A stretch of 64,000 bases of DNA from the NCBI RefSeq assembly GCF_964204645.1, contig NC_134032.1, positions 11,024,275 through 11,088,274 on the forward strand, given 5' to 3'. Below are positions 27,001 through 60,939 of the stretch, piece by piece. The DNA is from Tubulanus polymorphus (lineage: Eukaryota; Animalia; Nemertea). The notes beneath the pieces are model-generated. The model saw only the letters and a list, made by a program, of their open reading frames with translations. It was not told the origin of the DNA and made no database searches. Numbering within the stretch: the first letter of the stretch is position 1; each line of letters begins with the position of its first letter. A program made the position numbers and the translations under genes.

Positions 27001-30000
27001 CAATCAGCAGGACTCGAGCCTTGAATACATTCTTGTCCGGCCGGACAAATCGAGCAAGTCGTCGCCGAACCGGTGCTGTAAAATCCATCCTGACACGACT
27101 GAAATTCGTCAAAAATAATAATATGAAAAATTTTCATCCGTATTTTGAAGACCGCTTTGAAGTAGGGTCCCAATATTCAACCCCAGTGGCCAGTTCATGG
27201 GTTAGATTTAAAACGAAGTTAAGACAATCTAACAACCTAAGATCTTAAGATTTAAGACCACTTTTAGACTAAAGTCTCGACTACGGAACCGGGCCGAGGG
27301 TTCTAGGCTCAGTTTGAATGTCTAAAGTTTCAAACGGGGAACAGATCGAGAATGATCATTGGAAACGAAACTTACCGAGCAATCCGTCTGCCCCAACAGA
27401 CTATACGTGCCAGGCGAGCAGGCGGCCGGCGTCGTCGATACGTCCGAGCACGATTTACCCGTCGGGCAACTCGCGCAAGACGTCTGCCCGGGTTGATCTT
27501 GATACGTGCCCGTGGCGCAGGTGACCGGCTGAAGAAGCGGGTTCGGGCAGGCGGAGCCCGTCGGACAATCTACGCAACTCGAACCGTTCGAGTACTGACC
27601 AGCCTGAAATAATTCATGTTGAATTCACGATTCTATATTTACTGCATATTCATTTGACATATCATTTGATTTTAGACTGAAGAAGGCGGTTTAGGAATCA
27701 ACCAAAATATTTCTAGTATTTTAGAAAGACCTTTTAGTCTTTGAACAATTGTAGGATTTTACATTTATCAATTCACGTCAAAGTATTTACTTCGATTCTA
27801 TCAAATAAAGGTCCAAGTTTTACACAAAGATATTCGAATCAAAACGTTTGAGAAAGCCAATCCAATGGATTCCTTAGATTCTGGATTTAACCGATGGTTT
27901 AAAACCGACAGTTCTACAACTACAGTGGGTTGAAATGAACACGATATTGGTGTCGAAGTTACTCTAGGTCTACTACAATGATACACCACCAAATTCAAAA
28001 TCCATATTCCAAATCGTTGGGTTAGATCTGAAAGTTGTTCTTTTGTTTTAGTAAAAGGTTGAATACTTACAGTACAAAGGGCAGGTTGATTGGCTCCTCC
28101 GCAGCTAGTTCCAGGAGGGCAGGCCGTGCAGATGGTTGCTCCGGTTTCTGAATACTGTAACCAATGAGAACATTTTTTTCAAGCAATGAAAAAACTGGGA
28201 TAAATTCTTCTTTTTGATACACATCAAATTTGGCCCTTCATGCCGTATACACTTTTATTAAGTAGGAACTGGTTGATAAAACCGGCCTCCCCCAAAGTTA
28301 TCGATATATACCTCTCCAGTTGCGCAAGCGACAGGCTCCGCGGTGCTATCCGGACATTTCGATCCAGCTGGGCACTGCGTACAGGTCACTGCGCCCGTGC
28401 CCGTAAAGTAATATCCCGGAGCGCACTGAAATACAAAACATTTTTAAATTAACAATACAATTCTTTGAGAAATAAATCCCATCTCGTAATACAACAGACC
28501 TCAGCAATACAACAAGTTTGGATGATTTAGGTGCATCTTAAAGTTAAGGTTAAGTGATTATATTTCGTCAAGTTGCAATGCATTTTCATTCATTAGTTCG
28601 TTAAAGCATAAGTGGCAATAGTTACGTTTATGCAAGCAGATTTGCCCAGCTCGGGCTGGTATTGGCCCGCACCGCACAGCTGGGGCGTCGATTTCGAATC
28701 GGAGCAGCTAGAACCCCGTGGACACTCGGTACACTTATCAGAAGCTGGGTCCGTATTATAAAACCCAGCTGGGCACTGAAAATAAGACATTTTACGGCAC
28801 ATGAGTTAGTTATATTACCCTGAGATGTTAAGTTGTGAGTTTTTGATTCACTCATGTTAGTCGAATTTAAATCACTCAAAAGTGACGGAAAATATTTACG
28901 TTACGTTAACTAATTTTCCTTTTAGACGTATCAGGGTCATTTCATGATATAATAAGGAATTTTCAAGGAGAAATTTCAAATTTCAAACATCACATTCATC
29001 CCAACTACTGTGGACTCCTCCTAAATTGGTGCTGTTTATCTCAGTAAACTAGTAATTCAGTGGTTTTGTAAGCAAATTTTTACCCTTTATACTGGTTCAG
29101 TTTCTAATTCAGTAACCACCTAATTGCGTAGAGAATTGATTTAGGGGTAGTCTTCTGTACAACTACATACATTTCTAATAGCCTATTTCTCAAAATTGAA
29201 GGAGTTCTGGGTATTTCGCTGCATTTTTCAGTTTAAAAGCAGTTTTTAAGGAATCAAGGAGTCGTGGGGACCCTGTGTATTTCTGGACAGGCAGATTTAT
29301 TTTGATATAGTACGCATATTTTCAAGCATTCCAAAGACAGAAATATTTTGCAGGAAAATGAAGACACAGATTACAGTTACCATAATAGATAAAATAGTTA
29401 GTTACATTTAAGCAGTTAGTTTTTCCGGTGCTGGGTTGGTATTCGCCGCGCGCGCACGGCACGGACGCGGCTTTAGGATCTGCGCAACGATACCCGACTG
29501 GGCACACCGTACACGAACCGGTGCCCGTACTGGTTTTGAAATACCCGGCAGGGCACTAGAATAAAATGAAAACTAAAATCATATTTTGCAAACACATTTT
29601 AAAGATAATTTCAGAGATCATGGAATCAATGATTAGATAGTTACGCTGATGCAAGCAGGCTGCCCAGTACTGGGTTGGTATTCACCAGGGCCGCACGGTT
29701 GGGGCGCTAACGTTGGATCCGCGCAACTCGAGCCCACCAGACACTCCGTACAGTTATCAGCTGCAGGATTAGTATTGTAAAACCCGGCTGCACACTGAAA
29801 TTAAGCCACACGATTAATCGTTAGATTGTTCAGCCTTGCGGTAGAAAATAATTTTGCCGAAGTTAGGAAGCAGTCATTGCAAGTTTAAATTCTAGCATTA
29901 AAGTTAGTTAATATTTAGACGTGACGTCATTTTAGACAGCTATATCGATGACAAATATAGCACGCATATTTACATGTTTTTTTATTAGTGAAAAGATGAA

Positions 30001-33000
30001 TAACAGATGAAATAGTTAGTTACGTTTAAGCAGTTAGTTTTTCCGGTGCTGGGCTGGTATTCGCCACGCGCGCACGGCACGGACGCGGCTTTAGGATCGG
30101 CGCAACGATGCCCGACCGGGCACGCCTTACACGAATCGGCGCCCGGACTAGTTTTGAAAAATCCGGCGGGACACTGGAAAAAAATGTTAACCATCACACA
30201 AGATACACAACATAGAAATTTTTATACAAAATCTGGATGCGAGACATCTCGAAGGCTATTATTCGTATGATTATCGTTGGAATGGATTATCGCGCTTATT
30301 CAGCGTTTCACTATTCACAAAACAACGATGGTAATAGGTATTAGGTCAAGGAAACATTCCAGACTCTTTTCATTGTAAGTGTAAGATTTCATATCATCTT
30401 TACAACACTGAGAGTGTTTAATCAATGGTTATTAGAAAGCAGTTGTTCACTGATTGTTGAGTAAAAGTTAGTTTAATTCAAGACATAATTTTAAGGCAGA
30501 CTTATTTTTCTGTCCACATTTCGCGGCAGAATCAAAATACAGACAGTTAGTTCAAATAGTTACGTTGAGACAGTTAGTTTTTCCGGTGCTGGGCTGGTGT
30601 TCACCGCGCGCGCACGGCACGGGCGAGGCTTTAGGATCGGAGCAACGATGCCCGACTGGGCACACCGTACACGAATCGGTGCCTGTACTGTTTTTGAAAT
30701 ACCCAACAGGACACTGGAAAAAAACATTAACCGTCACACAAAATACGCAACAAACATCTTTTTTGAGATCAAAGCAGTCTGCCCTGTATTGGGCTGGTAT
30801 TCACCAGGGCCACATATTTGGGGCATTGAAGTTGGATCAGCACAACTGGAACCCAGCGAACATTCATTACATTTAACGGCTTCAGGTTTATCGTTGTAAA
30901 AACCAGTCGCGCACTGAAATTAAGCCGAAAGTTTCACGGTTTCTTGGTTAGATACCGTTACATCGGAAAAAGTGAGACAGCTTTTTAATTCTTGGAAATA
31001 CACCGAGCAAAAATGCAGGGTTTGATAAGATATGACTTCAATAGGCAATTTAAACATTGTTTCTCAAAAACTGTTCCCTGCATTTATTACTCAGAAAATT
31101 GGTTAGATAGTTACATCAATGCAAGCGCTCTGACCAGTTTTGGACTGGTATTTGCCCGCCTCACAAGCTTGAGGACTCAACAGCGGGTTCGAACACTGGT
31201 AACCTTTCAGACATGGTGTACACGCACCAGTCCCGGAAATTGTCTTGTAATATCCATCGGGGCACTGTAAAATATCAATGGTGTTAAGAACTTTCCTAGG
31301 ATTGCCGAAAGAGCGGACAGACAAGTTAAAGGAGCGGAAGCCTAAAGCCTCAGATGACTTAAAGAATGTTAATCACGAATTATTGATTCAGTATCAATTC
31401 AATTTTCATAACCGATTAGGAAGGTTGGCATCCTAAAACGCTGAATCGAATACCGGATAAGAATTTATTGAATAATGCAGAATAGTTTATTCATCCCACA
31501 TAAATGTACTTCTCTCTTTGTATGGTTTTATCACGAACATATCTGAATATCAGATATGCACTAAAGGTACACACGATAGCGACGATTAAATTCGCTGACG
31601 AATTTATACGCCCGATACGAGAGGGCACACGTAGCGATCAAACCAAATTCGGTCAGCGACTGGCACTTAGTGCGAGAGAGTTAACAAATCACATGATATC
31701 AACAATACATCCTATTGGTTGATAAAAATGGATCACTCGGCGGAATTCAGCGCTTAAATGAACAGACAATCTAATAGGGGTTAGTCTCGGAAAACCAAGA
31801 TCCAAGCGACGAAAAGCCAAACAAACAAACAAAATTTATCCTTGCGTACTGCAAAGGCTTCTAGTCAACCACCTTGCTGGAGAAAACGGGTATGATTGTC
31901 TTTTATGTGAATACTGCGTACCCTAACAAGAGTACCCAGCCTCCAATAATACTAGCATGATTGTCTAACTACCTGCAACATCGGATTAACGACGAACGAT
32001 ATTTTTGACTAGTATATATGAACAAGCACGTATTCACGAAAGAGGTGATATCCCTCAACATATTAACAACATTTGTAACATCGCCTTCGTATTCGTACTT
32101 TAACAATTTCATCCGTTTTAATGCGATAAGATATCTATTGACCGCATCAGGTGCTGACGTCATGATGACAACAGCCACGACCGAGGATATCATCCGCAAC
32201 GCTTGATCGCTGGAATATTCTTTCGCGCTCGTGAGCTTCGTTTCGTGTTTGCGAGCAACGACTTTGTACAATATCGACAGAGATAGGGTTATCATGGCGA
32301 AAAGTGGAATAAGACTGCCGAATATGAAGGCATGATAGCGTCGTATATGACCGGTATTTGGAATATGATCGAAAATATACCCCGGCTCGCCGTATGGGCA
32401 TGTGCGCTCACTTTTCACGTAAACGATCTGGAAAAAACGAAACAAGTTCATGAGAAAAACTGACAAACTTAACAGACACGCCATCATCCATGTTCTACGG
32501 ATCGTAAACCACGTTAACGCGCTTAGCGGAAAAAATACATTGATCATCCTTACGAATAAAATATAAACCACAGACCATCTTCTATTCATCTGCAGGGTCG
32601 CGTTTGGGACCATTATGAATAAAAGCATGAACGGCATCGTTTCTCGCGATTCGACGTAAAAAGCACCATTTCCCGAGATAACGTAGGACGCTAAATATCG
32701 AATTCCCCCTTTCAACAGCTTCGCTATATCTGCGACGCAATCGATTCCTGTATAGTACCGTAGAGTGACGAGAGAAACGGAATTCGATTTCTTCGCCATT
32801 CGCGTGAAGACGATCGTCGATATAACTCCCGAGATCAGCGACACTACTTGTAAGGGCGCGTGTACGAACAGCGTCACCCAAAATCTCGGTCTCAGCTTCG
32901 CGCATGTGACGTTTCGAACCATTTAGTTCGGATGGCAGAGAAGTTTAGGAATAACCAGCGACGATGGCGAAAATAATGCTGATTATAGCTCTACGATCGA

Positions 33001-36000
33001 TACATCCGTGAGTTCATAACATCCACGTACGAGCAATTTTCTCTATTGCTCGAAGAGAACATATGGAAGTCACGTCTGAACATAATAGCAGTAATAATTG
33101 GCCCGGGGACCTAAAATAGTCGCACGTATGTCCCGCGGACACACGCGGTAATACATCTATCCGTTGATTTTTCTGTGAGTACCGGTAGTTCACTCTTCCT
33201 TTACCGTAGTGTGATGATGTCGGAAACTTTTACAGACAATTTGTGAGAAGGATGCATTTAGAGCTGTTGAGAGGATATTCAAATATCGTGGACACTGAAA
33301 TAACAGAAACACGAGACTGGATCCACTGTTAACATGGCTGCAGGCTGAGCAGATGTTTTCTGAATGTTTTCATTATTCCTGAAGATTCCTTACATTTTCT
33401 GACTTTTTCCTTATCATTGTGGGATTCTCTCTACATCGCGTCAACACGGATATAGTGTTCTATCAATCGTGAAGATGTTATATCTTTTTGCCAATGACTA
33501 TTTTAACAATAAATGCTTGAGATCTGCCTGCTGCGTTTGACCGTCTGTGGTTCAAACCAGTTGGCTGCTACCAAATCCAAGTGGGTGAGGATAAACAACA
33601 TGGCCCAGTTTGATAGGCTGGTACATGTATTATCTTAACCTGGGGGGCTAACTCAATTGAAAATGTTAGCCCCAAGGTTAAAGCTAACACTAGCCTATAA
33701 AACCGGGCCCAGGTGTTCCAGCTTCGAACCCTGATGGATAAAAAGAGCTTAGTTTAATCATTCCACATAGAGCGTACCTTCGGATCAAGTATAAAATATG
33801 GTTATATAGTCCCTCATTGCGGAAGCTTAAGATAAAATGAAAGAGTGATCTGGTTCATAATTCTGTATTTGTATTTAACATCGGCAATCCCGACATTCCG
33901 ACACTCCCGACATACCAGCAATCGGACATACCCGACATTTTGACATACCGGCAATCCGACATACCCAACAATTCGACATACAACGATCCCAGCACCTCTC
34001 TACAGCCGAACGCCCCACGATCCCGGCACTGCTGTACAGGGGAATATCAAGAACCGAACGCCCCACGATCCTAGGGGAATATTAGGAACCAAACATTGCA
34101 CGATCCCAGCACCACTGTACAGGAGAATATTAGGAATCAAACGCCTCACGATCCCAGCAACTCTGTACAGGGGAATATTAGGAACCAAACACCCCACGAT
34201 CCCAGCAACTCTATACAGGGGAATACTGGAACCAAACGCCCCACCATCCCGGTATCTCTACAGGGGATTGATAGGAACCGAACGCCCCGTGATCCCAGCA
34301 TCTCTCTACAGGGGATTATTAGAAACCGAACGCCCCAGCCTTACAAATATATATTCTCAAAACAACTGGACAGGAATGTCTGTATATAGGTTTGCAGCAT
34401 TGCCGGAATGCCAGTTTGTCGGGAGTGTCGGTATGTCGGATTGCCGGTATGTCGGGAGTGTCGGTATGTCGGGAGTGCCGGTATGTCGGATTGCCGATAT
34501 GTCGGGAGTGCCGGTATGTCGGGATTGTCGGGAATGTTAAGATTGCCAGATCTTTGGTCTGCATTATGCGTATTGATACGTAAGGCAAAAAGGCCGTTGG
34601 ACCACCATATTTTATACTTGAGCCGTACCTTCTATCTTTATGAGATTGGTACTACTAACTGTCCACTGATTACAATCGGCCATCAGAAAATCCATCTCTT
34701 ATTTGACTTATGTGAATAATGCGTACATTGTAAAGGTGCGGCAATCCTCCGATAAGGGTAAACCCTGATAGTCTAGGAGGTACAGCTATAAACGGGATCT
34801 GTAACAAACAAAGGCCATAAGATCCCGGGTGACATATTTGGGGCTTTGAAGTTGGATCAGTACAACTTAAACCCAGCGGACACTCGTTACATTTATCAGC
34901 TCTGGGTTTATCATACTAAAACAGAAATCATATGTCAGCAAAGGTAAGATGGTTAATTTTCTCAATACACTGAAAAAAATCTGATGTCACTTCAAAAGGC
35001 AATTTAAACATAAGTTCTCAAAGACAGGACTGCATTTACGTCTGAGAAAATTGGTTAGTTAGATCAATGCAAGCGCTCTGACCAGGTTTGGGTAGGTATT
35101 TGCCGGCCTCCCAAGCTAGCTAACTCAAAAGCGGGTTCGGACACGGCATGCGCCTATACCAGCAGTTCTCTCGTAATATCCATCGGGGCGCTGTAAAATA
35201 TTAATAGTACTATGAAATCTCCTAGGATTGCCAAAGGAGCGGACAGACAACTTAAAGGAGCAGAAAGCCTTAAGTCTCCAGCGGATGACTTAAAAAGAAC
35301 GTTAATTGAGAATCATTGCTTCAACATCGATGCAATTTTCATAACCGATCAGACGACTGGCACCCTAAAACCTTGAATACTACTGGAATACTGGATAAGG
35401 ATTTCCTGAATAAAGCGGTAAAGATTATTCATCTCACATGTATTTAGTGTACATTTTCTAAGGTTTGCACGATTATCACAAACATAACCGAATGTTCAGA
35501 TACGCACTAACGATAATGATCTTCAGTGCCAAGAAACCACGCCAGAGTATCTTCTGTCCATCCGTACTGCAACAGACTTCTAGGCAACCACCTCGCCAAC
35601 GGGATACTGAAGAATATGAGTATCCTTACAGATTGCCCAGCCCTAGCTGCGGTAATACTTACGCGGGGTTGTGCAACTAACTGCAGCATCGAATAAACGA
35701 TGAACGAAATTTCGGACTGGAAAATATGAACAAGCACATGTTTACAAAAGACGTTAGATCCCTTAATGTATTAGCGACCATTCCAACCTCCAATTCGTAA
35801 GCGTACTTCAATAATTTCATCCTTTTAAACGCAGTAAGACATCTACTGACTCCTTTGGGCAACGTCACTACGAAGACAACACCCACGACCATGAATATCA
35901 TCTTCACTGCTTGATTGCTGGAATGTTCTTTTGAACTCGCGAGTTTCGATTCATGGTTTCGAGCGACGACCTTGCATAAAATTAGCAGAGATAAGGTGGT

Positions 36001-39000
36001 TATGGTAACCAAAGGAATAATACTATCTAATACGAAGGCGTGAAGGCGTCGTATTTGACCAGTATTCGATATAAAACCAAAAAGATATCCCGGTTTGCCA
36101 TATGGGCATGTATATTTACTTTTCACATCTATCTGGAAAAACCGGAACGTGTTAACGAGAAAAATTGACAAACTCAACAGACACGCCATGATCCATGTTC
36201 TACGGATCGTAAGCCACGATAACGCGCTTAGCGGAAAAAATACATTGATCATCCTTACGAATAAAATATAAACCACAGTCCAATTTGAATTCATCTGGAG
36301 GATGGTATTAGGGGTAATCGTAAATGAAAGCACGTAGGGCATCATTTCTTGAGATATAACGTAAAAAGCTCCATTTCCCATGATAATGTAAGCCACTAAA
36401 TATCGAATTCCTCCCTTTGACAGCTTCGCTATCAGCGCAAGACAGTCGATTCCTGTATAGTACCGTAGAGTAACGAGAGAAACTGAATTCGATTTCTTCG
36501 CCATTCGAGTGAAGACGATCGTCGATAAAACTCCCGAGATCAGCGACACTACTTGTATGGGCGCGTGTACGAACAACGTCACCCAAAATCTGGCTTGTTT
36601 TGGGCAGGTAACGTTTCGAAGCATTTAGTCGTCGGATCTAGCAAAGCTCAATGATGTTGAAGCACACAGGACGCAACAGCGATAATGGCTTCACAATCGA
36701 TACACCTGTGCGTCTCTATAACGTCTAAGATCAATTACCTCAATTGCTCGAAGTTAAATCTGAGCATAATTGCGGTTAAGCATCCTGGGGACGTATAATA
36801 AGCGGTATGTCCTGCAGACATATGTAATAACGCATCTATTTCGGAGATTTTTCTACCACCATTCATATTCTATGGTGTACGATATCGTAGAAACTTTTTG
36901 CAGAGATCACGGTACCGGCAACGCTACTCTGGTAAAAGAGGATACAGCGATGATCCGGCAGGATAACTAGTATAGCACTGGGTTACCGCTATTCAATATC
37001 CTTCTACACTTCAATTAAATTCAAATTGATCTTTCTCATTAACAAATCAGTTTCCAGTTAAAACTATACCATACCCCGACTGAGTGAGAAAGTCGATCTT
37101 ATATCTATTTGATGACTTGTTTGATAACTTACGCATTTGGCAGCCTAAAAATCAAGTTCAAATTTCATTAAAAATGAATGGATTTTCACTACAAATAACC
37201 CAGTGTTTTGTTGTGCCATCTGGAGAGCGCCGGTATCCCATTTGTGAGAGGGATATCGAGGTCATTATAGGTATTCGAATATCATGAGTTTTCATTTTTC
37301 CTTCGACTATTTCTACAATAAATGTTTGAATCCTACTTTGATAGTGCTTATTTCCCTGATTAATCTTATTTGACTTGCGCGCTGCCGCTGGTAAACTATG
37401 AAAGTGCTGCCTACGGATCTTGCACACCAGAATACTAGCAATTTCTACGTGAATAACACATACACTGTTAAGAGGTGCCAACCAAATGGCTCATAGAATT
37501 GAGTTGAAACGTTAAGCTACCAGATAGTTTTTCTTTTTATTGTGGGTTTTTATCTACTATTGATATTGGACAGCCACTTGTGTATGGAAACCACGCCAGA
37601 GTATCTTCTGTCCATGCGTACTGCAACAGACTTCTAGTCAACCACTTCGCCAACCGGATACTGAAGAATATGAGTATCCTTACGGATTGTCCAGCCCGAG
37701 CTGCGGTAATGCTTACGCGGGGTTGTGCAACTAACTGCAGCATCGAATAAACGATGAACGAAATTTCGGACTGGAAAATATGAACAAGCACATGTTTACA
37801 AAAGACGTTAGATCCCTTAATGTATTAGAGACCATTCCAACCTCTACTTCGTAAGCGTACTTCAATAATTTCATCCTTTTAAACGCGATAAGACATCTAC
37901 TGACTCCTTTGGGTAACGTCACTACAAAGACAACACCCACGACCATGAATATCATCTTCACTGCTTGATTGCTGGAATGTTCCTTTGAACTCGATGTGTG
38001 CTTTCGAGTGATAACCTTGCATAAAATTAGCAGAGACAAGGTGGTTATGGTAAACAAAGGGATAATACTATCCAATGTGAAGGCGTGAAGGCGTCGTATT
38101 TGACCAGTATTCGGTATAAAACTTAAAAGATATCCCGGTTTGCCATATGGGCATGTATATTTACTTTTCACATCTATCTGGAAAAACCGAAACATGTTAA
38201 CGAGAAAAATTGACAAACTCAACAGACACGCCATGATCCATGTTCTACGGATCGTAAGCCACGATAACGCGCTTAGCGGAAAAAATACATTGATCATCCT
38301 TACGAATAAAATATAAACCACAGTCCAAATTGAATTCATCTCGAGGATTGTACTAGGGGTAATCGTAAATGAAAGCATGTGGGGCATCATTTCTTGAGAT
38401 ATAACGTAAAAAGCTCCATTTCCCATGATAATGTAAGCCACTAAATATCGAATTCCTCCCTTCGACAGCTTGGCTATCAGCGCAAGACAGTCGATTCCTG
38501 TATAGTACCGTAGAGTAACGATAGAAACGGAATTCGATTTCTTCGCCATTCCCGTGAAGACGATCGTCGATATAACTCCCGAGATCAGCGACACTACTTG
38601 TAAGGGCGCGTGTATGAACAGCGTGACCCAAAATCTGGCTTGTTTCGGGCAGGTAACGTTTCGAAGCATTTAGTCGTCGGATCTAGCAAAGCTCAATGAT
38701 GTTGAAGCGCACGGAACACAACAATGATAACGGCTTCACAATCGATACACCTGTGCGTCTCTATAAAGTCTCAGATCAATTACCTCAATTGCTCGAAGTT
38801 GAACCGGAGCATAATTGCGGTTCAGCATCCTGGGGACAATAATAAGCGGTATGTCCTGCGGACATATGTAATAACGCATCTTTTCCGGAGATTTTTCTAC
38901 CACCATTCATATTCTATGGTCTATGATATCGTAGAAACTTTTTGCAGAGATCACGGTACTGGCAACGCTACTCTGGTAAAAGAGGATACAGCGATGATCC

Positions 39001-42000
39001 GGCAGGATAACTAGTATAGCACTGGGTTACCGCTATTCAATATCCTTCTACACTTCAATTAAATTCAAATTGATCTTTCTCATTAACAAATCAGTTTCCA
39101 GTTAAAACTATACCATACCCCGCCTGAGTGAGAAAGTCGATCTTATATCTATTTGATGACTTGTTTGATAACTTACGCATTTGGCAGCCTAAAAATCAAG
39201 TTCAAATTTCATTAAAAATGAATGGATTTTCACTACAAATAACCCAGTGTTTTGTTGTGCCATCTGGAGAGCGCAGGTATCCCATTTGTGAGAGGGATAT
39301 CGAGGTCATCATAGGTATTCGAATATCATGAGTTTTCATTTTTCCGTCGACTATTTCTACAATAAATGTTAGAATCCTACTTTGATAGTGCTTATTTCCC
39401 TGATTAATCTTATTTCACTTGCGCGCTGCCGCTGATAAACTATGAAAGTGCTGCCTACGGATCTTGCACACCAGAATACTAGCAATTTCTACGTGAATAA
39501 CACGTACACTGTTAAGAGGTGCCAACCCTCCGACAAGAGTAAACCCCAGGTGAAACTTTAGCAGGTACAGCTGCAAAGAGATCCTGAACCTTGTCACTTG
39601 CTATGACAGCATTTTGTTAATCAAATCAAAAAACGGATTTGAATAACTCAGTACACTTATCAATGCTGTGTCCGTATTATAAAACCTGGCTGGGTCCTGA
39701 AAATAAGACATTTTACGGCACATGAGTTAGTTATATTACCCTGAGATATTAAGTTAAGATATTAAGTCACTCAAAAGTGACGGAAGTAATTTATGTTACA
39801 TTAACTGATTTTCCTTTTAGACGTTTCAGGGTCCCTACAGATCAGTCATTTCACGATATAAGGAATTTTCAAAGAGAAATTTCAAATTTCGAGCCAGTGT
39901 CCACATCAAAATCATCCCAACTACTGTGGACTCCACCTAAATTGGTGCTGTTTATCTCAGTAAACCAGTAATTCAGTGGTTTTGTAAGCAAATTTTTATC
40001 CTTTATACAGCCTAAACTCAGTAACCACCTAATTGCGTAGAGAAGAATTGATTTAGACATAGTCTGTACAACTACATACGTTTCTAATAGCCTATTTCTC
40101 AAAATTGAAGAAGTTCTGGGTATTTTGCTGATATTGAAGAAGTTTCAAACACCTTTAAAGGCATTTTTCAGTTTAAAAGCAGTTTTTAAGGAATCAAGGA
40201 GTCTAGGGACTCTCTGTATTTTTAGACAGGCAGATTTCTTTTGGAGCAGTACGCATATATTTTCAAGCCTTCCAAAGAAAGAAATATTTTGCAGGAAAAT
40301 TAAGATACAGTTATCGTAGATAAAATAGTTAGTTACATTTAAGCAGTTAGTTTTTCCGGTACTGGGTTGGTATTCGCCGCGCCCGCACGGCACGGACGCG
40401 GCTTTAGGATCGGCGCAACGATACCCGACTGGGCACACCCTACACAAACTCGTGCCCGTACTGGTTTTGAAATACCCGGCAGGGCACTAGAATAAAATGA
40501 AAACTAAAATCACATTTCGCAAACACATTCAAGATAATTTCAAAGAGATCATGGAGTCAATGATTAGATAGTTATGCTGATGCAAGTAGGTTGCCCAGTA
40601 CTGGGTTGGGGCGCTGACGTTGGATCCGCACAACTCGAGCCCACCGGACACGCCGTACATTTATCAGCTGCAGTATTAGTATTGTGTACGACTAGTATTG
40701 CTGCACACTGAAATTAAGCCACACGATTAATTGTTAATTTTTCGGCCTTTCGGTAGGAAATTATTTTGCAAAAGTTAGGAAGCAGTCGTTGTAAGTTAAA
40801 TTCTAGCATTAAAGTTAGTTGATATTTAGACATGACGTCATTTTAGACAGCTATATCAATGGCAAATGTAGCACGCATATTTTCATGTATTTTTTATAAG
40901 TGAAAAGATGAATACAGTGGAATAACAGATGATATAGTTAGTTACGTTGAGACAATTAATTTTTTCCGGTGCTGGGTTGGTATTCACCACGTGCGCACGG
41001 CACGGGGGCGGCTTTAGGATCGGTGCAACTATACCCGGCTGGGCAAGCCGTACACGAACCGGTGCCCGCACTGTTTTTGAAGGACCCATCAGGACACTGG
41101 AAAAAACATTAACCATAACGCAAAATATACAACAAACATTTTTTGAGACCAAAACTTTTTACGACTTCTTCTTTTGCATTAGACATTTCAAAGGCGAAAG
41201 ATTATTAGTGAAATTATGAGGTTAATAATCGGATATTTACACTGATGCAAGCAGTCTGCCCTGTATTGGGCTGGTATTCACCAGGGCCACATTTTTGGGG
41301 CTTAAAAGTTGGATCAGCACAACTTGAACCCAGCGGACACTCATTACATGTTTCGGCTCCAGGTTTATCGTTGTAAAAACCAGTCGTGCACTGAAATTAA
41401 GCCGAAAGTTTCACGGTTTCTTGGTTAGATATCGTTACATCGGAAAAAGTTAGACAGCTTTTTAATTCATGAAATTACACCGAGCAAAAATGCAGGGTTT
41501 GATAAGATATGACTTCAACAGGCAATTTAAACATCGTTTCTCAAAAACTGTACCCTGCATATATAACTCAGAAAATTGGTTAGATAGTTACATCGATGCA
41601 AGCGCTCTGACCAGGTTTTGGCTGGTATTTGCCGACCTCACAAGCTTGAGGACTCAACAGCAGGTTCGAACACCGGTGACCTTTCAGACACGGTGTACAC
41701 GCACCAGTCCCGGAAATTGTCTTGTAATATCCATCGGGGCACTGTAAAATATCAATGGTGCTAAGACCTTTCCTAGGATTGCCAAAAGAGCGGACAGACA
41801 AGTTAAAGGAACAGAAAGCCTTAAGTCTCAGGTGGATGACTTAAAAAAATGTTAATTGAGAATTATTGATTAAACATTGATTTAATGTTCATAACCGATT
41901 AGAAGGTTGGCACCTTAAAACATTGACTACTACTGGAATACTGGATAAGGATTTCCTGAATAGAGCGGTAAAGATTATTCATCCCACATGTATTAAGTGT

Positions 42001-45000
42001 AAATTTCTCTTTCTAAGGTTTGCGCGATTATCACAAACATAACCGAATGTTCTGATACGCGCTGACGATAATGGTCTTCAGTACCAAGAAACCACGCCAG
42101 AGTATAGTAGATAAAAACCCACAATAAAAAGAAAAACTATCTGGTAGCTTAACGTTTCAACTCAATTCTATGAGCCATTTTCAAAAACAGTTTCTGAAAA
42201 TGGCTCATAGAATTGAGTTGAAACGTTAAGCTACCAGATAGTTTTTCTTTTTATTGTGGGTTTTTATCTACTATTGATATTGGACAGCCACTTGTGTATG
42301 GAAACCACGCCAGAGTATCTTCTGTCCATGCGTACTGCAACAGGCTTCTAGTCAACCACCTCGCCAACCGGATACTGAAGAATATGAGTATCCTTACGGA
42401 TTGTCCAGCCCGAGCTGCGGTAATGCTTACGCGGGGTTGTGCAACTAACTGCAGCATCGAATAAACGATGAACGAAATTTCGGACTGGAAAATATGAACA
42501 AGCACATGTTTACAAAAGACGTTAGATCCCTTAATGTATTAGCGACCATTCCAACCTCTACTTCGTAAGCGTACTTCAATAATTTCATCCTTTTAAACGC
42601 GATAAGACATCTACTGACTCCTTTGGGTAACGTCACTACAAAGACAACACCCACGACCATGAATATCATCTTCACTGCTTGATTGCTGGAATGTTCCTTT
42701 GAACTCGATGTGTGCTTTCGAGTGATAACCTTGCATAAAATTAGCAGAGACAAGGTGGTTATGGTAAACAAAGGGATAATACTATCCAATACGAAGGCAT
42801 GAAGGCGTCGTATTTGACCAGTATTCGATATAAAACCAAAAAGATATCCCGGTTTGCCATATGGGCATGTATATTTACTTTTCACATCTATCTGGAAAAA
42901 CCGAAACGTGTTTACGAGACAAATTGACAAACTCAACAGACATGCCATCATCCACGTTCTACGGATCGTAAGCCACGATAACGCGCTTAGCGGAAAAAAT
43001 ACATTGATCATCCTTACGAATAAAATATAAACCACAGTCCAAATTGAATTCATCTCGAGGATTGTACTAGGGGTAATCGTAAATGAAAGCACATAGGGCA
43101 TCATTCCTAGAGATATAACGTAAAAAGCTCCATTTCCCATGATAATGTAAGCCACTAAATATCGAATTCCTCCCTTCGACAGCTTGGCTATCAGCGCAAG
43201 ACAGTCGATTCCTGTATAGTACTGTAGAGTAACGAGAGAAACTGAATTCGATTTCTTCGCCATTCGAGTGAAGACGATCGTCGATAAAACTCCCGAGATC
43301 AGCGACACTACTTGTATGGGCGCGTGTACGAACAACGTCACCCAAAATCTGGCTTGTTTTGGGCAGGTAACGTTTCGAAGCATTTAGTCGTCGGATCTAG
43401 CAAAGCTCAATGATGTTGAAGCACACAGGACGCAACAGCGATAATGGCTTCACAATCGATACACCTGTGCGTCTCTATAACGTCTAAGATCAATTACCTC
43501 AATTGCTCGAAGTTAAATCTGAGCATAATTGCGGTTAAGCGTCCTGGGGACGTATAATAAGCGGTATGTCCTGCAGACATATGTAATAACGCATCTATTT
43601 CGGAGATTTTTCTACCACCATTCATATTCTATGGTGTACGATATCGTAGAAACTTTTTGCAGAGATCACGGTACTGGCAACGTTACTCTGGCAACTCTGG
43701 CAAAAGAGGATTCGGCGATAATCTGGCAGGATCGCTAGTATAGCACTGGGTAACCGGGATTCAATATCCTTCTACGCTTCAATCAAATTCGAATTGATCT
43801 TTCTCATTAATAAATCAGTTCCAGTGAAAACTATACCATACCTCGACTGAGTGAGAAAATCGATCTCATATCTATTTGATATCTTGTTTGATGATTTTCG
43901 AATTCGGAAGCCTAAAAATCAAGTTCAAATTTCATCGAAAATGAATGGATTTTCACTACAAATCACTCTGTGTTTTGTTGTACTATCTGGCGAGCGCCGG
44001 TATCCCATTTGTGAGAGGGGATATGGAGGTCATTATAGGTATTCGAATATTATGAGTTTTCATTTTTCCTTTGACTATTTCTACAATAAATGTTTGAATC
44101 CTACTTTGATAGTGCTTATTTCCCTGATTAATCTTATTTGACTTGCGCGCCGCCACTGGTAAACTATGAAAGTACTGCCTACGGATCTTGCACACCAGAA
44201 TACTAGCAATTTCTATGTGAATAACACATACACTGTTAAGAGGTGCCAACCCTCCGACAAGAGTAGACCCCGGGTGAAACTTTAGCAGGTACAGCTGCAA
44301 AGAGATCCTGAACCTTGTCACTCGCTATGACAGCATTTTGTTAATCAAATCAAAAACGGATTTGAAATTCGTTATGAGTAACTCAGTACACTCATCAGAA
44401 GCTGTGTCCGTATTATAAAACCTGGCTTGGCACTGAAAATAAGACATTTTACGGCACATGAGTTAGTTATATTACCCTGAGATATTAAGTTAAGATATTA
44501 AGTCACTCAAAAGTGACGGAAGTAATTTATGTTACATTAACTAATTTTCCTTTTAGACGTTTCAGGGTCCCTACAGATCAGTCATTTCACGATATAAGGA
44601 ATTTTCAAGGAGAAATTTCAAATTTCGAGCCAGTGTCCACATCAAAATCATCCCAACTACTGTGGACTCCTCCTAAATTGGTGCTGTTTATCTCAGTAAA
44701 CCAGTAATTCAGTGGTTTTGTAAGCAAATTTTTATCCTTTATACAGCCTAAACTCAGTAACCACCTAATTGCGTAGAGAAGAATTGATTTAGACATAGTC
44801 TGTACAACTACATACGTTTCTAATAGCCTATTTCTCAAAATTGAAGAAGTTCTGGGTATTTTGCTGATATTGAAGAAGTTTCAAACACCTTTAAAGGCAT
44901 TTTCAGTTTAAAAGCAGTTTTTAAGGAATCAAGGAGTCTAGGGACTCTCTGTATTTTTAGACAGGCAGATTTCTTTTGGAGCAGTACGCATATATTTTCA

Positions 45001-48000
45001 AGCCTTCCAAAGAAAGAAATATTTTGCAGGAAAATTAAGATACAGTTATCGTAGATAAAATAGTTAGTTACATTTAAGCAGTTAGTTTTTCCGGTACTGG
45101 GTTGGTATTCGCCGCGCCCGCACGGCACGGACGCGGCTTTAGGATCGGCGCAACGATACCCGACTGGGCACACCGTACACGAACTCGTGCCCGTACTGGT
45201 TTTGAAATACCTGGCAGGGCACTAGAATAAAATGAAAACTAAAATCACATTTCGCAAACACATTCAAGATAATTTCAAAGAGATCATGGAGTCAATGATT
45301 AGATAGTTATGCTGATGCAAGTAGGTTGCCCAGTACTGGGTTGGGGCGCTGACGTTGGATCCGCACAACTCGAGCCCACCGGACACGCCGTACATTTATC
45401 AGCTGCAGTATTAGTATTGTGTACGACTAGTATTGCTGCACACTGAAATTAAGCCACACGATTAATTGTTAATTTTTCGGCCTTTCGGTAGGAAATTATT
45501 TTGCAAAAGTTAGGAAGCAGTCGTTGTAAGTTAAATTCTAGCATTAAAGTTAGTTGATATTTAGACATGACGTCATTTTAGACAGCTATATCAATGGCAA
45601 ATGTAGCACGCATATTTTCATGTATTTTTTATAAGTGAAAAGATGAATACAGTGGAATAACAGATGATATAGTTAGTTACGTTGAGACAATTAATTTTTT
45701 CCGGTGCTGGGTTGGTATTCACCACGTGCGCACGGCACGGGGGCGGCTTTAGGATCGGTGCAACTATACCCGGCTGGGCAAGCCGTACACGAACCGGTGC
45801 CCGCACTGTTTTTGAAGGACCCATCAGGACACTGGAAAAAACATTAACCATAACGCAAAATATACAACAAACATTTTTTTGAGACCAAAACTTTTTACGA
45901 CTTCTTTTGCATTAGACATTTCAAAGGCGAAAGATTATTAGTGAAATTATGAGGTTAATAATCGGATATTTACACTGATGCAAGCAGTCTGCCCTGTATT
46001 GGGCTGGTATTCACCAGGGCCACATTTTTGGGGCTTAAAAGTTGGATCAGCACAACTTGAACCCAGCGGACACTCATTACATGTTTCGGCTCCAGGTTTA
46101 TCGTTGTAAAAACCAGTCGTGCACTGAAATTAAGCCGAAAGTTTCACGGTTTCTTGGTTAGATATCGTTACATCGGAAAAAGTTAGACAGCTTTTTAATT
46201 CATGAAATTACACCGAGCAAAAATGCAGGGTTTGATAAGATATGACTTTAACAGGCAATTTAAACATCGTTTCTCAAAAACTGTACCCTGCATATATAAC
46301 TCAGAAAATTGGTTAGATAGTTACATCGATGCAAGCGCTCTGACCAGGTTTTGGCTGGTATTTGCCGACCTCACAAGCTTGAGGACTCAACAGCGGGTTC
46401 GAACACCGGTGACCTTTCAGACACGGTGTACACGCACCAGTCCCGGAAATTGTCTTGTAATATCCATCGGGGCACTGTAAAATATCAATGGTGCTAAGAA
46501 CTTTCCTAGGATTGACAAAAGAGCGGACAGACAACTTAAAGGAACAGAAAGCCTTAAGTCTCAGGTGGATGACTTAAAAGAATGTTAATTGAGAATTATT
46601 GATTAAACATTGATTCAATTTTCATAACCGATTAGAAGGTTGGCACCTTAAAACATTGACTACTACTGGAATACTGGATACGGATTTCCTGAATAGAGCA
46701 GTAAAGATTATTCATCCCACATGTATTAAGTGTACATTTCTCTTTCTAAGGTTTGCGCGATTATCACAAACATAACCGAATGTTCTGATACGCGCTGACG
46801 ATAATGGTCTTCAGTACCAAGAAACCACGCCAGAGTATAGTAGATAAAAACCCACAATAAAAAGAAAAACTATCTGGTAGCTTAACGTTTCAACTCAATT
46901 CTATGAGCCATTTTCAAAAACAGTTTCTGAAAATGGCTCATAGAATTGAGTTGAAACGTTAAGCTACCAGATAGTTTTTCTTTTTATTGTGGGTTTTTAT
47001 CTACTATTGATATTGGACAGCCACTTGTCTATGGAAACCACGGCAGAGTATCTTCTGTCCATGCGTACTGCAACAGGCTTCTAGTCAACCACCTCGCCAA
47101 CCGGATACTGAAGAATATGAGTATCCTTACGGATTGTCCAGCCCGAGCTGCGGTAATGCTTACGCGGGGTTGTGCAACTAACTGCAGCATCGAATAAACG
47201 ATGAACGAAATTTCGGACTGGAAAATATGAACAAGCACATGTTTACAAAAGACGTTAGATCCCTTAATGTATTAGCGACCATTCCAACCTCTACTTCATA
47301 AGCGTACTTCAATAATTTCATCCTTTTAAATGCGATAAGACATCTACTGACTCCTTTGGGTAACGTCACTACGAAGACAACACCCACGACCATGAATATC
47401 ATCTTCACTGCTTGATTGCTGGAATGTTCCTTTGAACTCGATGTGTGCTTTCGAGTGATAACCTTGCATAAAATTAGCAGAGACAAGGTGGTTATGGTAA
47501 ACAAAGGGATAATACTATCCAATACGAAGGCGTGAAGGCGTCGTATTTGACCAGTATTCGATATAAAACCAAAAAGATATCCCGGTTTGCCATATGGGCA
47601 TGTATATTTACTTTTCACATCTATCTGGAAAAACCGAAACGTGTTTACGAGACAAATTGACAAACTCAACAGACACGCCATCATCCATGTTCTACGGATC
47701 GTAAGCCACGATAACGCGCTTAGCGGAAATAATACATTGATCATCCTTATGAATAAAATATAAACCACAGTCCAAATTGAATTCATCTCGAGGATTGTAC
47801 TAGGGGTAATCGTAAATGAAAGCATGTGAGGCATCATTTCTTGAGATATAACGTAAAAAGCTCCATTTCCCACAATAATGTAAGCCACTAAATATCGAAT
47901 TCCTCCCTTCGACAGCTTGGCTATCAGCGCAAGACAGTCGATTCCTGTATAGTACCGTAGAGTAACGATAGAAACGGAATTCGATTTCTTCGCCATTCCC

Positions 48001-51000
48001 GTGAAAACGATCGTCGATATAACTCCCGAGATCAGCGACACTACTTGTAAGGGTGCGTGTACGAACAGCGTCACCCAAAATCTGGCTTGTTTTGGGCAGG
48101 TAACGTTTCGAAGCATTTAGTCATCGGATCTAGCAGACCTGTATCAATGATGTTGAAGCGCACAGGACGCAACAGTGATAATGGCTTCACAATCAATACA
48201 CCTATGAGTATATAACGTCTACGATCAATTACCTCAATTTGCTCGATGTTGAATCTGAGCAAAATTGCGGTTAAGCATCCTGGGGACAGTAATAAGCGGT
48301 ATGTCCTGCGGACATATGTAATAACGCATCTATTTCGGAGATTCGACCACCATTCATATTCTATGGTCTATGAGGTGCCAACCCTCCGACAAGAGTAGAC
48401 CCCAGGTGAAACTTTAGCAGGTACAGCTGCAAAGAGATCCTGAACCTTGTCACTCGCTGTGACAGCATTTTGTTAATCAAATCAAAAACGGATTTGAAAT
48501 TCGTTACGAGTAACCCCAGCAGCCCCAATTGATTTCATTCATGCTGCTAAAATCTTAAATCAGTGGAATGCTATCTCTTGGTTCAGAATTCAGCCTTCAA
48601 CAAGGAATTTTCAATAAGTAAGGAACAGCATTTGCGGTGAAAACTATTCAAAAAATAGATAGGCGCAATACAGAAAAATACAGTAAGGATATTTACAGAA
48701 ATACAGCTAGTTTGCTGGGTATTTGGTTGGTATTTGCCCTCGCCGCAGGCTTGCGGTGGTATAGTCGAGTTCGCGCAGCTACTACCCACTGGGCACGGCT
48801 TACATGATTGAGCTTTCGTTGCCGTATTGTAAGATCCGGACGGGCACTGTGAAAAATAATTAGTCATCAAGATTAGCAATGTTAGTATCCAAGGAATTTG
48901 CTAATTATAATTCAGCATGGTGTTAATTAGATTAGCTTTGAAACATTTAGATTACGACGTTTAAGAATGTTTCAACACAAGATTTTGTATTAACAGTAGA
49001 TCTTAGGTAGATGTAGTTAGTTACATTTAAGCACGACGTTTTTCCTTTCAATGGTTGGTATTCACGTGCACGCAGTGTGTTAAACGACAACGACAAAAAC
49101 ATTTTAGAGTGTTGGGTCCTCACTTGCGATTTTGTACAAAAATTAAGCACTTTTTATCCAAGTTCAACAGTTAAACTAGACTTATCAAAGTGAATTGATT
49201 TAAAGCAAGAATTTCTCCTATAATTTGAGTGCGATACGTCTACATACAGTTAGAACCCAAGCTTGTTATGCGTGTTGTGAACGTGACCAAAAATTACCAA
49301 TTTCAAACAGATAAGTTAAGCATCAATGCAATGTTTTGAAAGCCAGTTTCAAACAATGTGTTTAACACCAAAAACACCTAAGAAATCTCAGTGAAAGTAA
49401 CTTACAGCCAGGCACGTGGTTTGACCAGCACTTTTTTGATACTCCCCGGCACCGCACGGTGTACCTGCTGCCGTTTTACTGGGACATTTATGGCCTGAAA
49501 ATACAGCATTATGATTGATCTCGCACTTGAATCTCGCACTTTATTATCTATTATTCAACGTTTATTTTCTTTTTTTATTACTAAAATGTACCATACACAA
49601 TTCAAATAATCATCATTAAGACATAGAGTTACATGTAAGTACATGTGCTTCTATATTGTAAAGCGTAGTAAAGAAAAATGACAAAAAGGAGGTGTATTAA
49701 TTCCATAAAAAGCCTAATGCCCTGGCTGAATAGGAATTGGACATCTGAACAGGAAATCCTAACTTATTCAAGAAATTGAATGTCTATTCAGACAAAATTT
49801 TGGCCATTCCTAACTTCCATTGTCAGGCCGAATGTTAGAAAACTGCCTAAAAGTTGTGGTTACAATACACTTTTAATTTCTTAAACTTTTACTTGTCAAG
49901 CGTATGACCTACGATTATCATATTTCTGAAAATTTTGTGCATCAGCATCTGATAGAAGTTAGGACCAGGGGCTGATTTAAGGGATAAAAGCCACTCGCCG
50001 GGGGGCAAAGTGTATCTGAAATCTTGCTTCCCTTGTCATAAATCTGCTTGCCCTACAAGTACCGGTAGTAGGGCAGACCTGCAAGTAGTAGGGCAGTCCC
50101 ATTGGTGGCACAATCATCCGTTGGATCAATTGGGGGAAAAAAGCTTTGAGACGCATTAGTTCACTAGTCCGGCAGACAAGTGACAAACAATTGCCTTAAT
50201 GAATACTCGTCCCGGCCAATCAGACAAGTGCTTAGTTGCAGACCCTGAAGGATCAGGGAGAAAGATCCACACTTCTAAGTTGCTATTCAGTGTTTAAACA
50301 TTCTACAGTTAAATGAACGATCGAACTGCGGGTCCGGCGTAGTGCGTAAAGATTGAATTAAGATTAGAGGCGTTTCGATTACGCTAAATACCCAGCGATT
50401 ATAATATTCTGTATTTCTAACATTTTTCTTACCTGCGCTGCATAGCGTACAAAATGCACCACCTGGAGTCGCGCGGTACGAACCTACAATGACATACAAT
50501 GAATTATTGAGAACATTCTTAAAAATTCTTAATCAAAGAATATTCTAGTACGTAATTCATAGATATTACTCTGACAGATATAGTATCTGCAGAAAATTAA
50601 AAAATGACAATTTTGTGATAATTGCAATCGCTGACGGGTTACTGGTGAAGGGCCATTTGTATATAATTCTTATTGTCAACTGTTAAAAGAAACATGTGTT
50701 TTCGATAAGTAATTTATGGACATTTTCGTTTTCTGCCCTCTGCAAATGTGTTTCATTGTTGTTTCTTACATTAATTTTTAAAATATTGTTAGAAAAAAAA
50801 AATTATTTCGTTTTTTATTTCAGTATTCATTTTCATTTTCGTTTCAGCGAGTTCGCCAGGGAGCTGTTGTTTGAATAATTGAAACGTTCTTTTACGCGAA
50901 AAGGAAACATTAGGCGAATATCGATGAGCATTATTGAAAATAATTCTAGAACGCGATTTCGCAATAATTCCTCACGCGTAATCAATAAGCTTATTCAAAA

Positions 51001-52537
51001 TTTAAAACCTCGCATTAAGGTTAACAGCGCCGCGCTATAATACAAATTGCGGGATTAAGAAAATTCCGGCCGTTTTAAGAATATTTCTCGTCTAAAACTA
51101 TAAAGCGTGGAGTAAATATTACACGCACTTAAGATCACAGTAGAGACAGGTTTTTAAGTGGTGTGCGCTTATCAAATCAACAGTTTATGGTCAAAATCTA
51201 TGTACATGCATTTATATGGGCACATTGCTAAAATCTTAAGTGGACAAATCCCCGAGTACCGATAGTAATGTTTACAGTAAGTTAACAGCCGATATAATGT
51301 TGACGGTATACAGTACTGTGACCTCTGTTGGTTCACAGTGGGACAGTTTAATAATTCATAAACATTACTAAGTCGCATATGGCAACGTGTATATGACAGT
51401 ACACAGCGTTACCGGTCATATATGCGAGTGTCCACTATAGAGCCTATGTATTTCACAGCCTAGTTTTAATATGTAAGAATTTAATTTGAGAAAGTCCTAA
51501 CATTAATTCGAAATCAAAATTCGAGCTTTCGTTTTAACATGAGAACTGTTGATTCTTATGTCACACAAGGACCAAGCAGGACACGATAGATCAGTCCTCC
51601 TAAATAGACCAGCTATCAGCCTAGAAACCCTTGATTTAGAATAAGATCATCCTCTGAAACTTAATCTAACATTTCAAAAGGGCTTCATACTACTCTATTC
51701 AAAAAGGGTTTCGTAATATCTTTCGAACTGGTTTACCCTGAGTTTATTCACAATTTCAAGATCGCACTTCTTTTCAAAAAAGTAAACCTTTTGACTTCGA
51801 TTTTACCTTTTAAATCACCTATTTCTAATCAACTACACACAATACTCATCGGAGCCGATCTTTTCAACTGAATCATTATAAACATAATTTTTTCCAAAGG
51901 TTTTAACAAAATTTTGCGGGATATATTACGAGTTTTGTAACAGTAATACTTATGAAACTTATGACCTTGAAATACGTCGTTAATATATTCCGGCATAAAA
52001 TCTGTTGTATACAGATTAAATATACTTTTACGACAGGAACTAAACAGCGCTTATTTTCTTATCTCTCGGTCGTCGGTCGTTTGTTTGCCAAACTTCTAAT
52101 TTATAATCTCTACATTAGCTCAGCCACGTCTTTGCTGGAGGCGCCATTAAATTAAAATATACACGTTTCGCTCGTTGCAGAAAAACCGACGTAGGCCTAA
52201 CTGGTTTTCCACTGTCTCGACAAATTTGCGTCCCCGAAAGACGATTTAGTTTTAGAGCGATAAAGGCCCGGTTTTATAGACTAGTGGCATTATGTTTAAG
52301 ACCCAGGGGCTAAATCTATCGAAAATGAATTGAGTAAACCCTCGGGTTAAACAAAATACCAGTCTATGAAATTGAGTCCAGGACTCAGTTTCACAAAAAA
52401 GTTAAACTCAAATTTTTGGTGTAATTGCCATTGGTTACTTCATGTTTTCAATGAGGACAACAATTCAAACTTAACTGATATGAGCTTAAACTTTTTCGTG
52501 AAACTAGGTCCAGGGTTTTACAGGATTACCTACTGTT

Positions 52538-52605
<68 letters not shown>

Positions 52606-60364: not shown

Positions 60365-60939
60365 TTTCTATAATTAAGGCAGAGTTTTTAAAGCCACGCG
60401 ATCGATTTCAGGGTCCAAAGCTCTTCATCAGATGACAAACATAAAGGCGACATGTAGTAAGTTTGTCACTTGGACCAGTCCTGGTATTTCAAAATTGAAT
60501 TTGACCCTCAATTACACGATTTTCTCGTTGAAAATGAATTAACTTTGACTCGGAATCAACTGTGGATCTGGATCCAATTCGGAGCCTGAAATCAATCGAG
60601 TTTGAAGATCTATACATCTATTGTGGCTTTATATTATGTGGCTATAAAAATTCGTTATTTTTTGTTTCATTTTGCCAAGTTGGTCATGTCAATGTCTTTA
60701 CTTCAGTGTAACATCGAGTTTTTCGGATATATCCTAGAAAATTATCCCAAGACAAAAAGAGACTTTAGTTACATAGTCATTGTGTGCTAGACTGCTGTAA
60801 TTCTTAATTAGGCGAAGAAAAATTTGAGATCAGTCGATTTCGGAACTTAGCTTGGTTTACTGTGATAGATGGCGGATATCTATGGAACTGCGAGTGCTTT
60901 ATTTTAAGCAAAGGGTAATCTGTCTCAATACATGTAGTA

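What the first reader, a model, noticed from the sequence alone, without database searches (positions are those of the whole stretch)
28626..49080. Array of interchangeable 150-nt, phase-0 exons inside a giant Cys-rich gene: candidate combinatorial or variable-length ectodomain system
Seen: between ordinary exons 49406-49494 (ends phase 0) and 28312-28425 (starts phase 0) lie 13 intact exons of exactly 150 nt. Each encodes one 50-aa unit with six invariant Cys and variable residues between them. About 10 dead copies are mixed in. No other part of the gene has this one-repeat-per-exon design; its other exons are 51-1893 nt and mostly phase 1. Any subset of cassettes keeps the frame. Established: Dscam-type clusters produce isoform diversity from duplicated same-phase exons. 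Inference: this N-terminal region varies by splicing (mutually exclusive or combinatorial) and/or by copy number, as expected of a recognition, adhesion or immune protein.
Basis: partly seen in the sequence, partly recalled or inferred. Interest (0 to 1): 0.85.

Follow-up and report, generated by a model that had tools for sequence, protein, structure and literature searches.

The report
Optional repeat exons in giant protein
A ribbon-worm gene for an ancient, roughly 8,000-residue cell-surface rod protein carries 13 intact and 10 broken copies of one small exon, all with an unusually weak splice signal, so they are probably optional plug-in segments; no RNA data were available to show how they are spliced.

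Summary
Observation confirmed: 13 intact 150-nt phase-0 AG/GT exons (six Cys; 12 distinct peptides) and 10 dead copies lie in the animal orthologue of fish si:ch211-286b4.4, a giant Ephrin_rec_like-repeat membrane protein. New here: every cassette donor lacks both -1G and +5G (0 of 44 other donors do), and this motif is kept across six lineages with saturated synonymous sites. Two 151-nt frameshifted copies keep both splice sites although the rest of the gene is intact. Both facts favour skipping. The cassette is a hybrid of the two flanking exons, and skipping all cassettes gives the layout seen in orthologues. Dscam features were not found: no docking site, no steric block, no positive selection. 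The Ciona orthologue model holds about 17 such units in one chain, so constitutive inclusion remains a live rival. Clusters B and C are young segmental duplicates co-amplified with nested GPCR genes. All reads that mapped were DNA, so splicing is untested. Best reading: a tenascin-C-like optional-repeat array (about 0.5); one-of-n choice about 0.15. The scan noted other symmetric-exon arrays on other DNA of this genome.

The parts
58159..58258 (-). Probable first coding exon of the host gene (hydrophobic signal/anchor-like stretch, ends phase 1)
   Evidence: Read from the sequence; inference, no prediction tool run
50433..55524 (-). Five ordinary N-terminal exons (55524-55440, 54872-54599, 53981-53873, 53090-52896, 50483-50433)
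   Evidence: Phase-consistent, stop-free chain; colinear with the ray orthologue
49406..49494 (-). Upstream ordinary exon; ends phase 0 with a +5G donor; its last 17 codons resemble the cassette 3' third
49023..49076 (-). Dead 3' fragment of a c/e-type cassette
48697..48846 (-). Intact cassette z (single copy, most divergent)
47181..48116 (-). Nested intronless 7TM GPCR copy 1 (Pfam 7TM_GPCR_Srw, E 2.8e-06)
46837..47007 (.). Palindromic core of a dispersed ~200-bp MITE-like element; second copy 42104-42274; half copy at the duplication breakpoint 37484-37573
44381..46474 (-). Cluster B: intact a 46474-46325, b 46123-45974, e 45221-45072; 151-nt frameshifted c 45831-45681 with both splice sites intact; dead b2 45442-45311; truncated d 44432-44381
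42448..43383 (-). Nested GPCR copy 2 (96% aa identity to copy 1)
39646..41741 (-). Cluster C, about 99% identical to B over the cassettes: intact 41741-41592, 41390-41241, 40486-40337; 151-nt frameshifted 41096-40946; dead 40707-40576 and 39696-39646
35680..38669 (-). Nested GPCR copies 3 (38669-37734) and 4 (36624-35680)
34824..35190 (-). Two decayed cassettes (a-type 35190-35064; b-type about 34914-34824), remains of a fourth cluster
31972..32922 (-). Nested GPCR copy 5 (71% aa identity to copy 1)
28626..31264 (-). Cluster A (oldest layout): intact a 31264-31115, c 30713-30564, c2 30173-30024, b2 29794-29645, e 29555-29406, d 28775-28626; b 30913-30772 lost its donor by a deletion
28312..28425 (-). 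Downstream ordinary exon; starts phase 0; its first 33 codons resemble the cassette 5' two thirds
94..28154 (-). 38 further exons of the Cys-rich rod; the gene continues about 40 kb past the window start to a Cys-poor C-terminal region

Best explanation
The host is the animal orthologue of fish si:ch211-286b4.4, an ancient ~8,000-residue membrane-type protein whose outer part is a long disulfide-bonded rod. An unequal crossover between the repeated coding sequence of exons 49494 and 28425 duplicated the phase-0 intron between them and created a hybrid 150-nt exon for one 50-aa rod module (inferred from sequence similarity). That exon multiplied into at least six old lineages under purifying selection (shown). 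Blocks of cassettes were later re-duplicated together with a nested GPCR gene, and many young copies decayed (shown). All cassettes have normal acceptors but a very weak donor (shown). They are therefore probably skipped by default and included optionally, none, one or several per transcript (inferred). The result would be rods that differ near the N-terminus by about 2 nm and one surface patch per cassette, as with the optional repeats of tenascin-C. Haplotypes probably add differences in cassette content (partly shown).
For: All 15 cassettes with both sites have a donor lacking both -1G and +5G, against 0 of 44 other donors of the gene; U1 pairing -1.3 to -2.6 versus -4.5 to -11.6 kcal/mol. 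Donor positions +3..+10 are 76% identical between six deep lineages, against 31% for +11..+40 and 41% for third codon positions. All intact U1 genes read have canonical 5' ends, so no compensating U1 was found. Two 151-nt copies keep the same splice signals as intact c-type cassettes and end in a stop, yet the gene is stop-free through the window and colinear with orthologues over about 7,000 aa; obligatory inclusion would destroy it. Hybrid origin: columns 5-20 score higher against exon 28425 in 6 of 6 lineages, columns 39-50 higher against exon 49494 in 6 of 6. Orthologues of Hydra, Trichoplax, hemichordates and a ray have one 50-aa unit directly before the 28425 equivalent, as in the zero-cassette form. 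dN/dS 0.07-0.34 among older pairs; c family p = 2e-5. Two tandem units fold at pLDDT 94.6 and match the Mst1 mastigoneme rod, TM 0.83.
Against: No RNA evidence: runs X1-X3 cover introns and are DNA; the one possible RNA run gave nothing. The cassettes share one ancestor, so the weak donor is one event plus persistence, not 15 independent events. The Ciona RefSeq model carries about 17 tandem units in one chain, and annotated isoforms of ray, Hydra and Ciona do not differ by such units. The assembled haplotype could be a young null allele. Very weak donors could also mean that the cassettes are hardly ever included.
Confidence: 0.5

Rival explanations
1. Constitutive tandem repeat: all functional cassettes are spliced in series, and length varies only between haplotypes and species, as in the Ciona and Fabomonas proteins.
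For: Ciona model with about 17 tandem units and a Fabomonas transcript-derived protein with 5. The N-terminal rod length varies widely between animals and this part is missing in bony vertebrates. With the eight older cassettes the N-terminus (about 665 aa) is near hemichordate length. Most dead copies have lost their donor, as expected if an included broken exon is harmful.
Against: Donors far weaker than any ordinary donor of the gene. Two frameshifted copies with both sites intact in an otherwise intact gene.
Confidence: 0.2
2. Mutually exclusive choice of one cassette per transcript, Dscam-style, giving up to 12 variants at one position.
For: Equal length, same phase, homologous exons, dead copies tolerated. 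Weak splice sites are a conserved feature of the Dscam exon 6 cluster (PMC3535345).
Against: No common docking site in the flanking introns or exons. Introns between intact neighbours are 89 nt or longer, above the gene's shortest ordinary introns of 72-85 nt. Any combination is in frame, so NMD cannot enforce exclusivity. The zero-cassette form is complete.
Confidence: 0.15
3. Mostly silent relics: the cassettes are seldom included now, and clusters B and C exist only as passengers of GPCR amplification.
For: 10 of 23 copies are dead. The GPCR copies are intact with dN/dS about 0.3-0.6. A-versus-B purifying selection on intact cassettes is only borderline (omega 0.37, p = 0.07), and B versus C shows 4 nonsynonymous and 0 synonymous changes.
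Against: Clear purifying selection within cluster A, invariant Cys, and a conserved donor motif. The passenger origin of B and C is accepted in the best explanation and does not make cluster A silent.
Confidence: 0.1
4. Alternative last exons: the weak donor is ignored, translation runs into a nearby intronic stop and the RNA is polyadenylated there or at a nested GPCR site, giving short secreted proteins with variable C-termini.
For: An in-frame stop follows three codons after the donor in the a, b2 and c lineages. GPCR copies 1-3 have an AATAAA 193 nt past their stop on the same strand.
Against: PolyA hexamers are not clearly enriched after cassettes (5 of 11 versus 11 of 35 ordinary introns). 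The conserved bases include third codon positions, which fits a donor better than coding sequence.
Confidence: 0.05

Closest known systems
Tenascin-C alternatively spliced FNIII repeats (PMC4422809)
   Same: A block of homologous one-exon-one-module repeats inside a repeat rod whose other modules are mostly split across exons; number differs between species; all-skipped form is complete.
   Different: Different module (50-aa Cys-rich, phase 0). Here 10 dead copies, block duplication with a nested GPCR, and one conserved atypical donor. Splicing is not shown here.
Drosophila Dscam1 variable exon clusters (PMC3535345, PMC4691838)
   Same: Many duplicated, equal-length, same-phase exons near the N-terminus of a surface protein; weak splice sites.
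   Different: No docking/selector pairing found; cassettes are whole extra modules and not alternatives for a required part; one-of-n choice untested.
si:ch211-286b4.4 family (giant PF07699 Ephrin_rec_like repeat proteins)
   Same: Orthologous: the window's exon falls in the animal clade with the fish protein (support 95/92) and is colinear over about 7,000 aa. The zebrafish gene is testis-enriched (10.1101/650218).
   Different: Most orthologues have one such unit here; Ciona has an independent run of about 17; bony vertebrates lack the region. No cassette array was found described (one paper names the gene).
Chlamydomonas Mst1 cysteine-rich rod (PDB 9b4h, 8wa2; PMC11015965)
   Same: Best structural match of two tandem units (TM 0.83, E 1.5e-4); 678 aa span 26 nm there, so about 2 nm per cassette.
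   Different: Structural likeness only. Mst1 has Ig-like and polyproline parts that were not seen here; orthology not tested.

Membership tests
Dscam-type mutually exclusive exon cluster | Tandem homologous exons of equal length and phase | tested here: met
Dscam-type mutually exclusive exon cluster | Exactly one exon per transcript, no exon-joining reads | not testable with these tools
   Only DNA contigs mapped; no RNA holder listed
Dscam-type mutually exclusive exon cluster | Common docking site pairing with a selector beside each exon | tested here: not met
   No shared partner above shuffles or control introns; single genome only, so short sites could be missed
Dscam-type mutually exclusive exon cluster | Other enforcement of exclusivity (steric block or frameshift on joint inclusion) | tested here: not met
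   Introns between intact neighbours 89 nt or longer; all combinations in frame
Dscam-type mutually exclusive exon cluster | Weak splice sites on variable exons | tested here: met
   Dscam comparison in PMC3535345
Tenascin-C-type optional repeat array | One exon per complete module, frame-neutral, inside a repeat rod | tested here: met
Tenascin-C-type optional repeat array | All-skipped form is a complete protein | tested here: met
   Phases match, and orthologues have this layout
Tenascin-C-type optional repeat array | Transcripts with differing numbers and combinations of repeats | not testable with these tools
   No RNA reads
Diversifying immune/recognition locus | Positive selection on variable residues | tested here: not met
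   omega 0.07-0.48 for intact pairs other than B versus C, which has only 4 changes; site models not run
si:ch211-286b4.4 orthologue group | Colinear giant PF07699 rod with conserved Cys-poor C-terminal region, and placement in the animal clade | tested here: met

The most novel reading that the evidence does not exclude
A stochastic or cell-specific splicing system that evolved independently in a nemertean: a conserved non-canonical donor keeps each cassette off by default, a so far unknown factor switches copies on, and cells display different combinations of 12 modules at the tip of a ciliary or sperm surface rod, with haplotypes adding further variation.
Probability: 0.15. Interest if true: 0.8.

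Novelty: new variant of a known kind. Interest (0 to 1): 0.5.

Why it matters
If the cassettes are optional, this is a young, still turning-over exon array in which birth (intron duplication between two repeat exons), expansion, decay and a shared weak donor can all be read from one locus. It would allow a direct test of what decides whether duplicated symmetric exons become constitutive, optional or mutually exclusive, with Ciona as an independent contrast in the same gene. It also offers a handle on an ancient, unstudied giant surface protein. If inclusion is constitutive, it is an ordinary lineage-specific repeat expansion.

Tried and rejected
RNA evidence: the look-up of sequencing runs listed no RNA holder; read laying on 27200-33150 showed X1-X3 are DNA and X5 gave nothing. 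Contig depth was not used as copy number, because the tool warns against it and the figures were inconsistent. Docking sites: one z = -6.9 hit from 8 shuffles vanished with 100 shuffles over whole introns. Compensating U1 or U6 variants: none found. A second cassette array elsewhere in the genome: none; only the host gene and its paralogue on contig 1 matched. An unplaced haplotig of B/C: none. Exon structure of orthologues: full-length proteins exceed the 5000-aa limit and the one fitting fragment had no DNA. Close relatives: cassette-profile and metagenome searches gave only distant hits, and the loci inspected were intron-poor non-animal genes. A U12-type donor-like octamer at +5 in cassette z was rejected: out of frame and not shared. 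Base-calling artefact for B/C rejected: B- and C-specific bases occur in X1 contigs; tandem versus allelic arrangement was not tested.
Full report
Observation. A scan for AG-[150 nt, open, six Cys]-GT on the minus strand gives exactly 13 exons between 48846 and 28626; shuffles give none. A profile search adds ten dead copies. The flanking exons have the stated phases, and the other exons of the window form a stop-free, phase-consistent chain of 51-1893 nt, mostly phase 1. Only 12 peptides are distinct, and four neighbouring ordinary exons are also phase 0-0.

Host gene. The window lies on contig 8 of a 267.8-Mb genome. Earlier scan notes name the species as the ribbon worm Tubulanus polymorphus; I did not verify this. 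The exons match Pfam Ephrin_rec_like. The gene runs about 40 kb beyond the window start to a Cys-poor C-terminal region and is colinear with 7,700-8,000-aa proteins of a ray, Trichoplax, Hydra and Ciona over about 7,000 residues. A tree of one large exon places it in the animal clade that holds fish si:ch211-286b4.4 (95/92), apart from a second animal paralogue. The only paper found that names the gene reports testis enrichment in zebrafish (10.1101/650218). A single cassette folds at pLDDT 82; two tandem Ciona units fold at 94.6 and best match the cysteine-rich rod of the Chlamydomonas mastigoneme protein Mst1, TM 0.83. From the Mst1 dimensions (PMC11015965) one cassette adds about 2 nm. This points to a structural rod; ligand binding was not tested.

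How the array arose. Cassette columns 5-20 resemble exon 28425 more than exon 50483 in all six deep lineages, and columns 39-50 resemble the end of exon 49494 in all six. The simplest origin is an unequal crossover that duplicated the intron between those two exons. In line with this, Hydra, Trichoplax, two hemichordates and a ray have a single 50-aa unit right before the 28425 equivalent, which is the zero-cassette layout here. Old lineages (z, a, b, b2, c/e, d) are 51-76% identical with dN/dS 0.07-0.34. Clusters B and C are block duplicates of cluster A (82-87% identity with gaps) and of each other (4,714-bp period, about 99% over the cassettes), each preceded by an intronless GPCR gene on the same strand. 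One breakpoint (37484) lies at the centre of a dispersed palindromic element. So six of the 13 intact exons are young passengers of segmental duplication.

Evidence on splicing. No RNA mapped: X1-X3 cover introns, X5 gave nothing. Two indirect lines favour skipping. First, all 15 cassettes with both sites have donors lacking both -1G and +5G, against 0 of 44 other donors. U1 pairing energies do not overlap (-1.3 to -2.6 versus -4.5 to -11.6 kcal/mol). The motif GTAA(C/A)TA is kept across six lineages while intron positions +11..+40 are at background. The copies share an ancestor, so this is persistence and not independent gain. The 44 donors were picked by score and then checked by phase and open frame; a further 52 picked by best pairing alone also showed none, but that set is biased. 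No variant U1 was found. Second, the 151-nt copies at 45831 and 41096 keep the same splice signals as intact c-type cassettes and end in a stop, while the gene is otherwise intact; obligatory inclusion would make this haplotype null.

Mutual exclusivity. No common docking site was found in either flanking intron or exon. Introns between intact neighbours are 89 nt or longer, against 72-85 nt for the shortest ordinary introns. All combinations are in frame. Weak sites are a Dscam exon 6 feature (PMC3535345), so exclusivity is not excluded, but nothing specific supports it.

The constitutive rival. The Ciona RefSeq model has about 17 such units in one chain, and the Fabomonas protein has five. 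Annotated isoforms of ray, Hydra and Ciona do not differ by these units. The N-terminal rod varies greatly in length between animals and this part is absent in bony vertebrates. Tandem units are therefore tolerated, and constitutive use keeps about 0.2.

Polymorphism. B-specific and C-specific bases both occur in X1 contigs, so both sequences exist, but their tandem arrangement was not tested and contig depth is not a copy number. An X1 contig follows cluster A from 30080 and leaves the reference at 30773, the edge of the deletion that removed the b donor; X2 and X3 contigs cross that deletion but leave the reference at 30484. The unlaid letters were not shown, so structural alleles are inferred, not demonstrated.

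Comparison. The anatomy is closest to tenascin-C, whose optional FNIII repeats are each one exon while most constitutive ones are split, and whose number varies by species (PMC4422809). It works like that kind by inference; membership needs RNA. It fails the Dscam features that could be tested. No positive selection was seen, so the immune or recognition reading is unsupported.

Verdict. Real feature, new variant of a known kind. Optional inclusion 0.5, constitutive 0.2, mutually exclusive 0.15, mostly silent 0.1, alternative last exons 0.05. Interest 0.5.

Noticed in passing
window 31972-48116 (-): Five intact intronless Srw-like 7TM genes nested on the host strand; a sixth close relative lies about 600 kb away on the same contig. 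Their 3' parts are almost identical while 5' parts differ by 4-6%, suggesting conversion or unequal crossover.
   Followed up: partly
window 46837-47007, 42104-42274, 37484-37573: Near-perfect 171-nt palindrome, core of a ~200-bp element with about 40 or more genomic copies; one duplication breakpoint sits at its centre.
   Followed up: partly
window 59654-63242: Myb/SANT gene plus DDE_Tnp_4 transposase: a PIF/Harbinger-type transposon just upstream of the host gene.
   Followed up: partly
L001:1-3876 and L002:8600-10000: Large insertion with long ORFs in an intron of the host gene; looks like a DIRS-type retrotransposon from ORF motifs (from memory, not tested).
   Followed up: no
L009 (G000 contig 1, 5840000-5849999): A second giant Cys-rich repeat gene, probably the other animal paralogue; no cassette array seen in this part.
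   Followed up: partly
L013-L037 (G000 contig 10, 0.7-3.4 Mb): A cluster of more than a dozen U1 snRNA genes with variant stem sequences but canonical 5' ends, plus several broken copies.
   Followed up: partly
L007:3280-9256 (-); L005 and L006 (-): Two tandem MATE-transporter-like ORFs upstream of the window (judged by eye) and another tandem group of intronless 7TM-like genes just past the 3' end of the host gene.
   Followed up: no
window 33875-34540: Short tandem repeats (17, 33, 48 bp) with partly inverted arrangement between the decayed cluster and GPCR copy 5.
   Followed up: no
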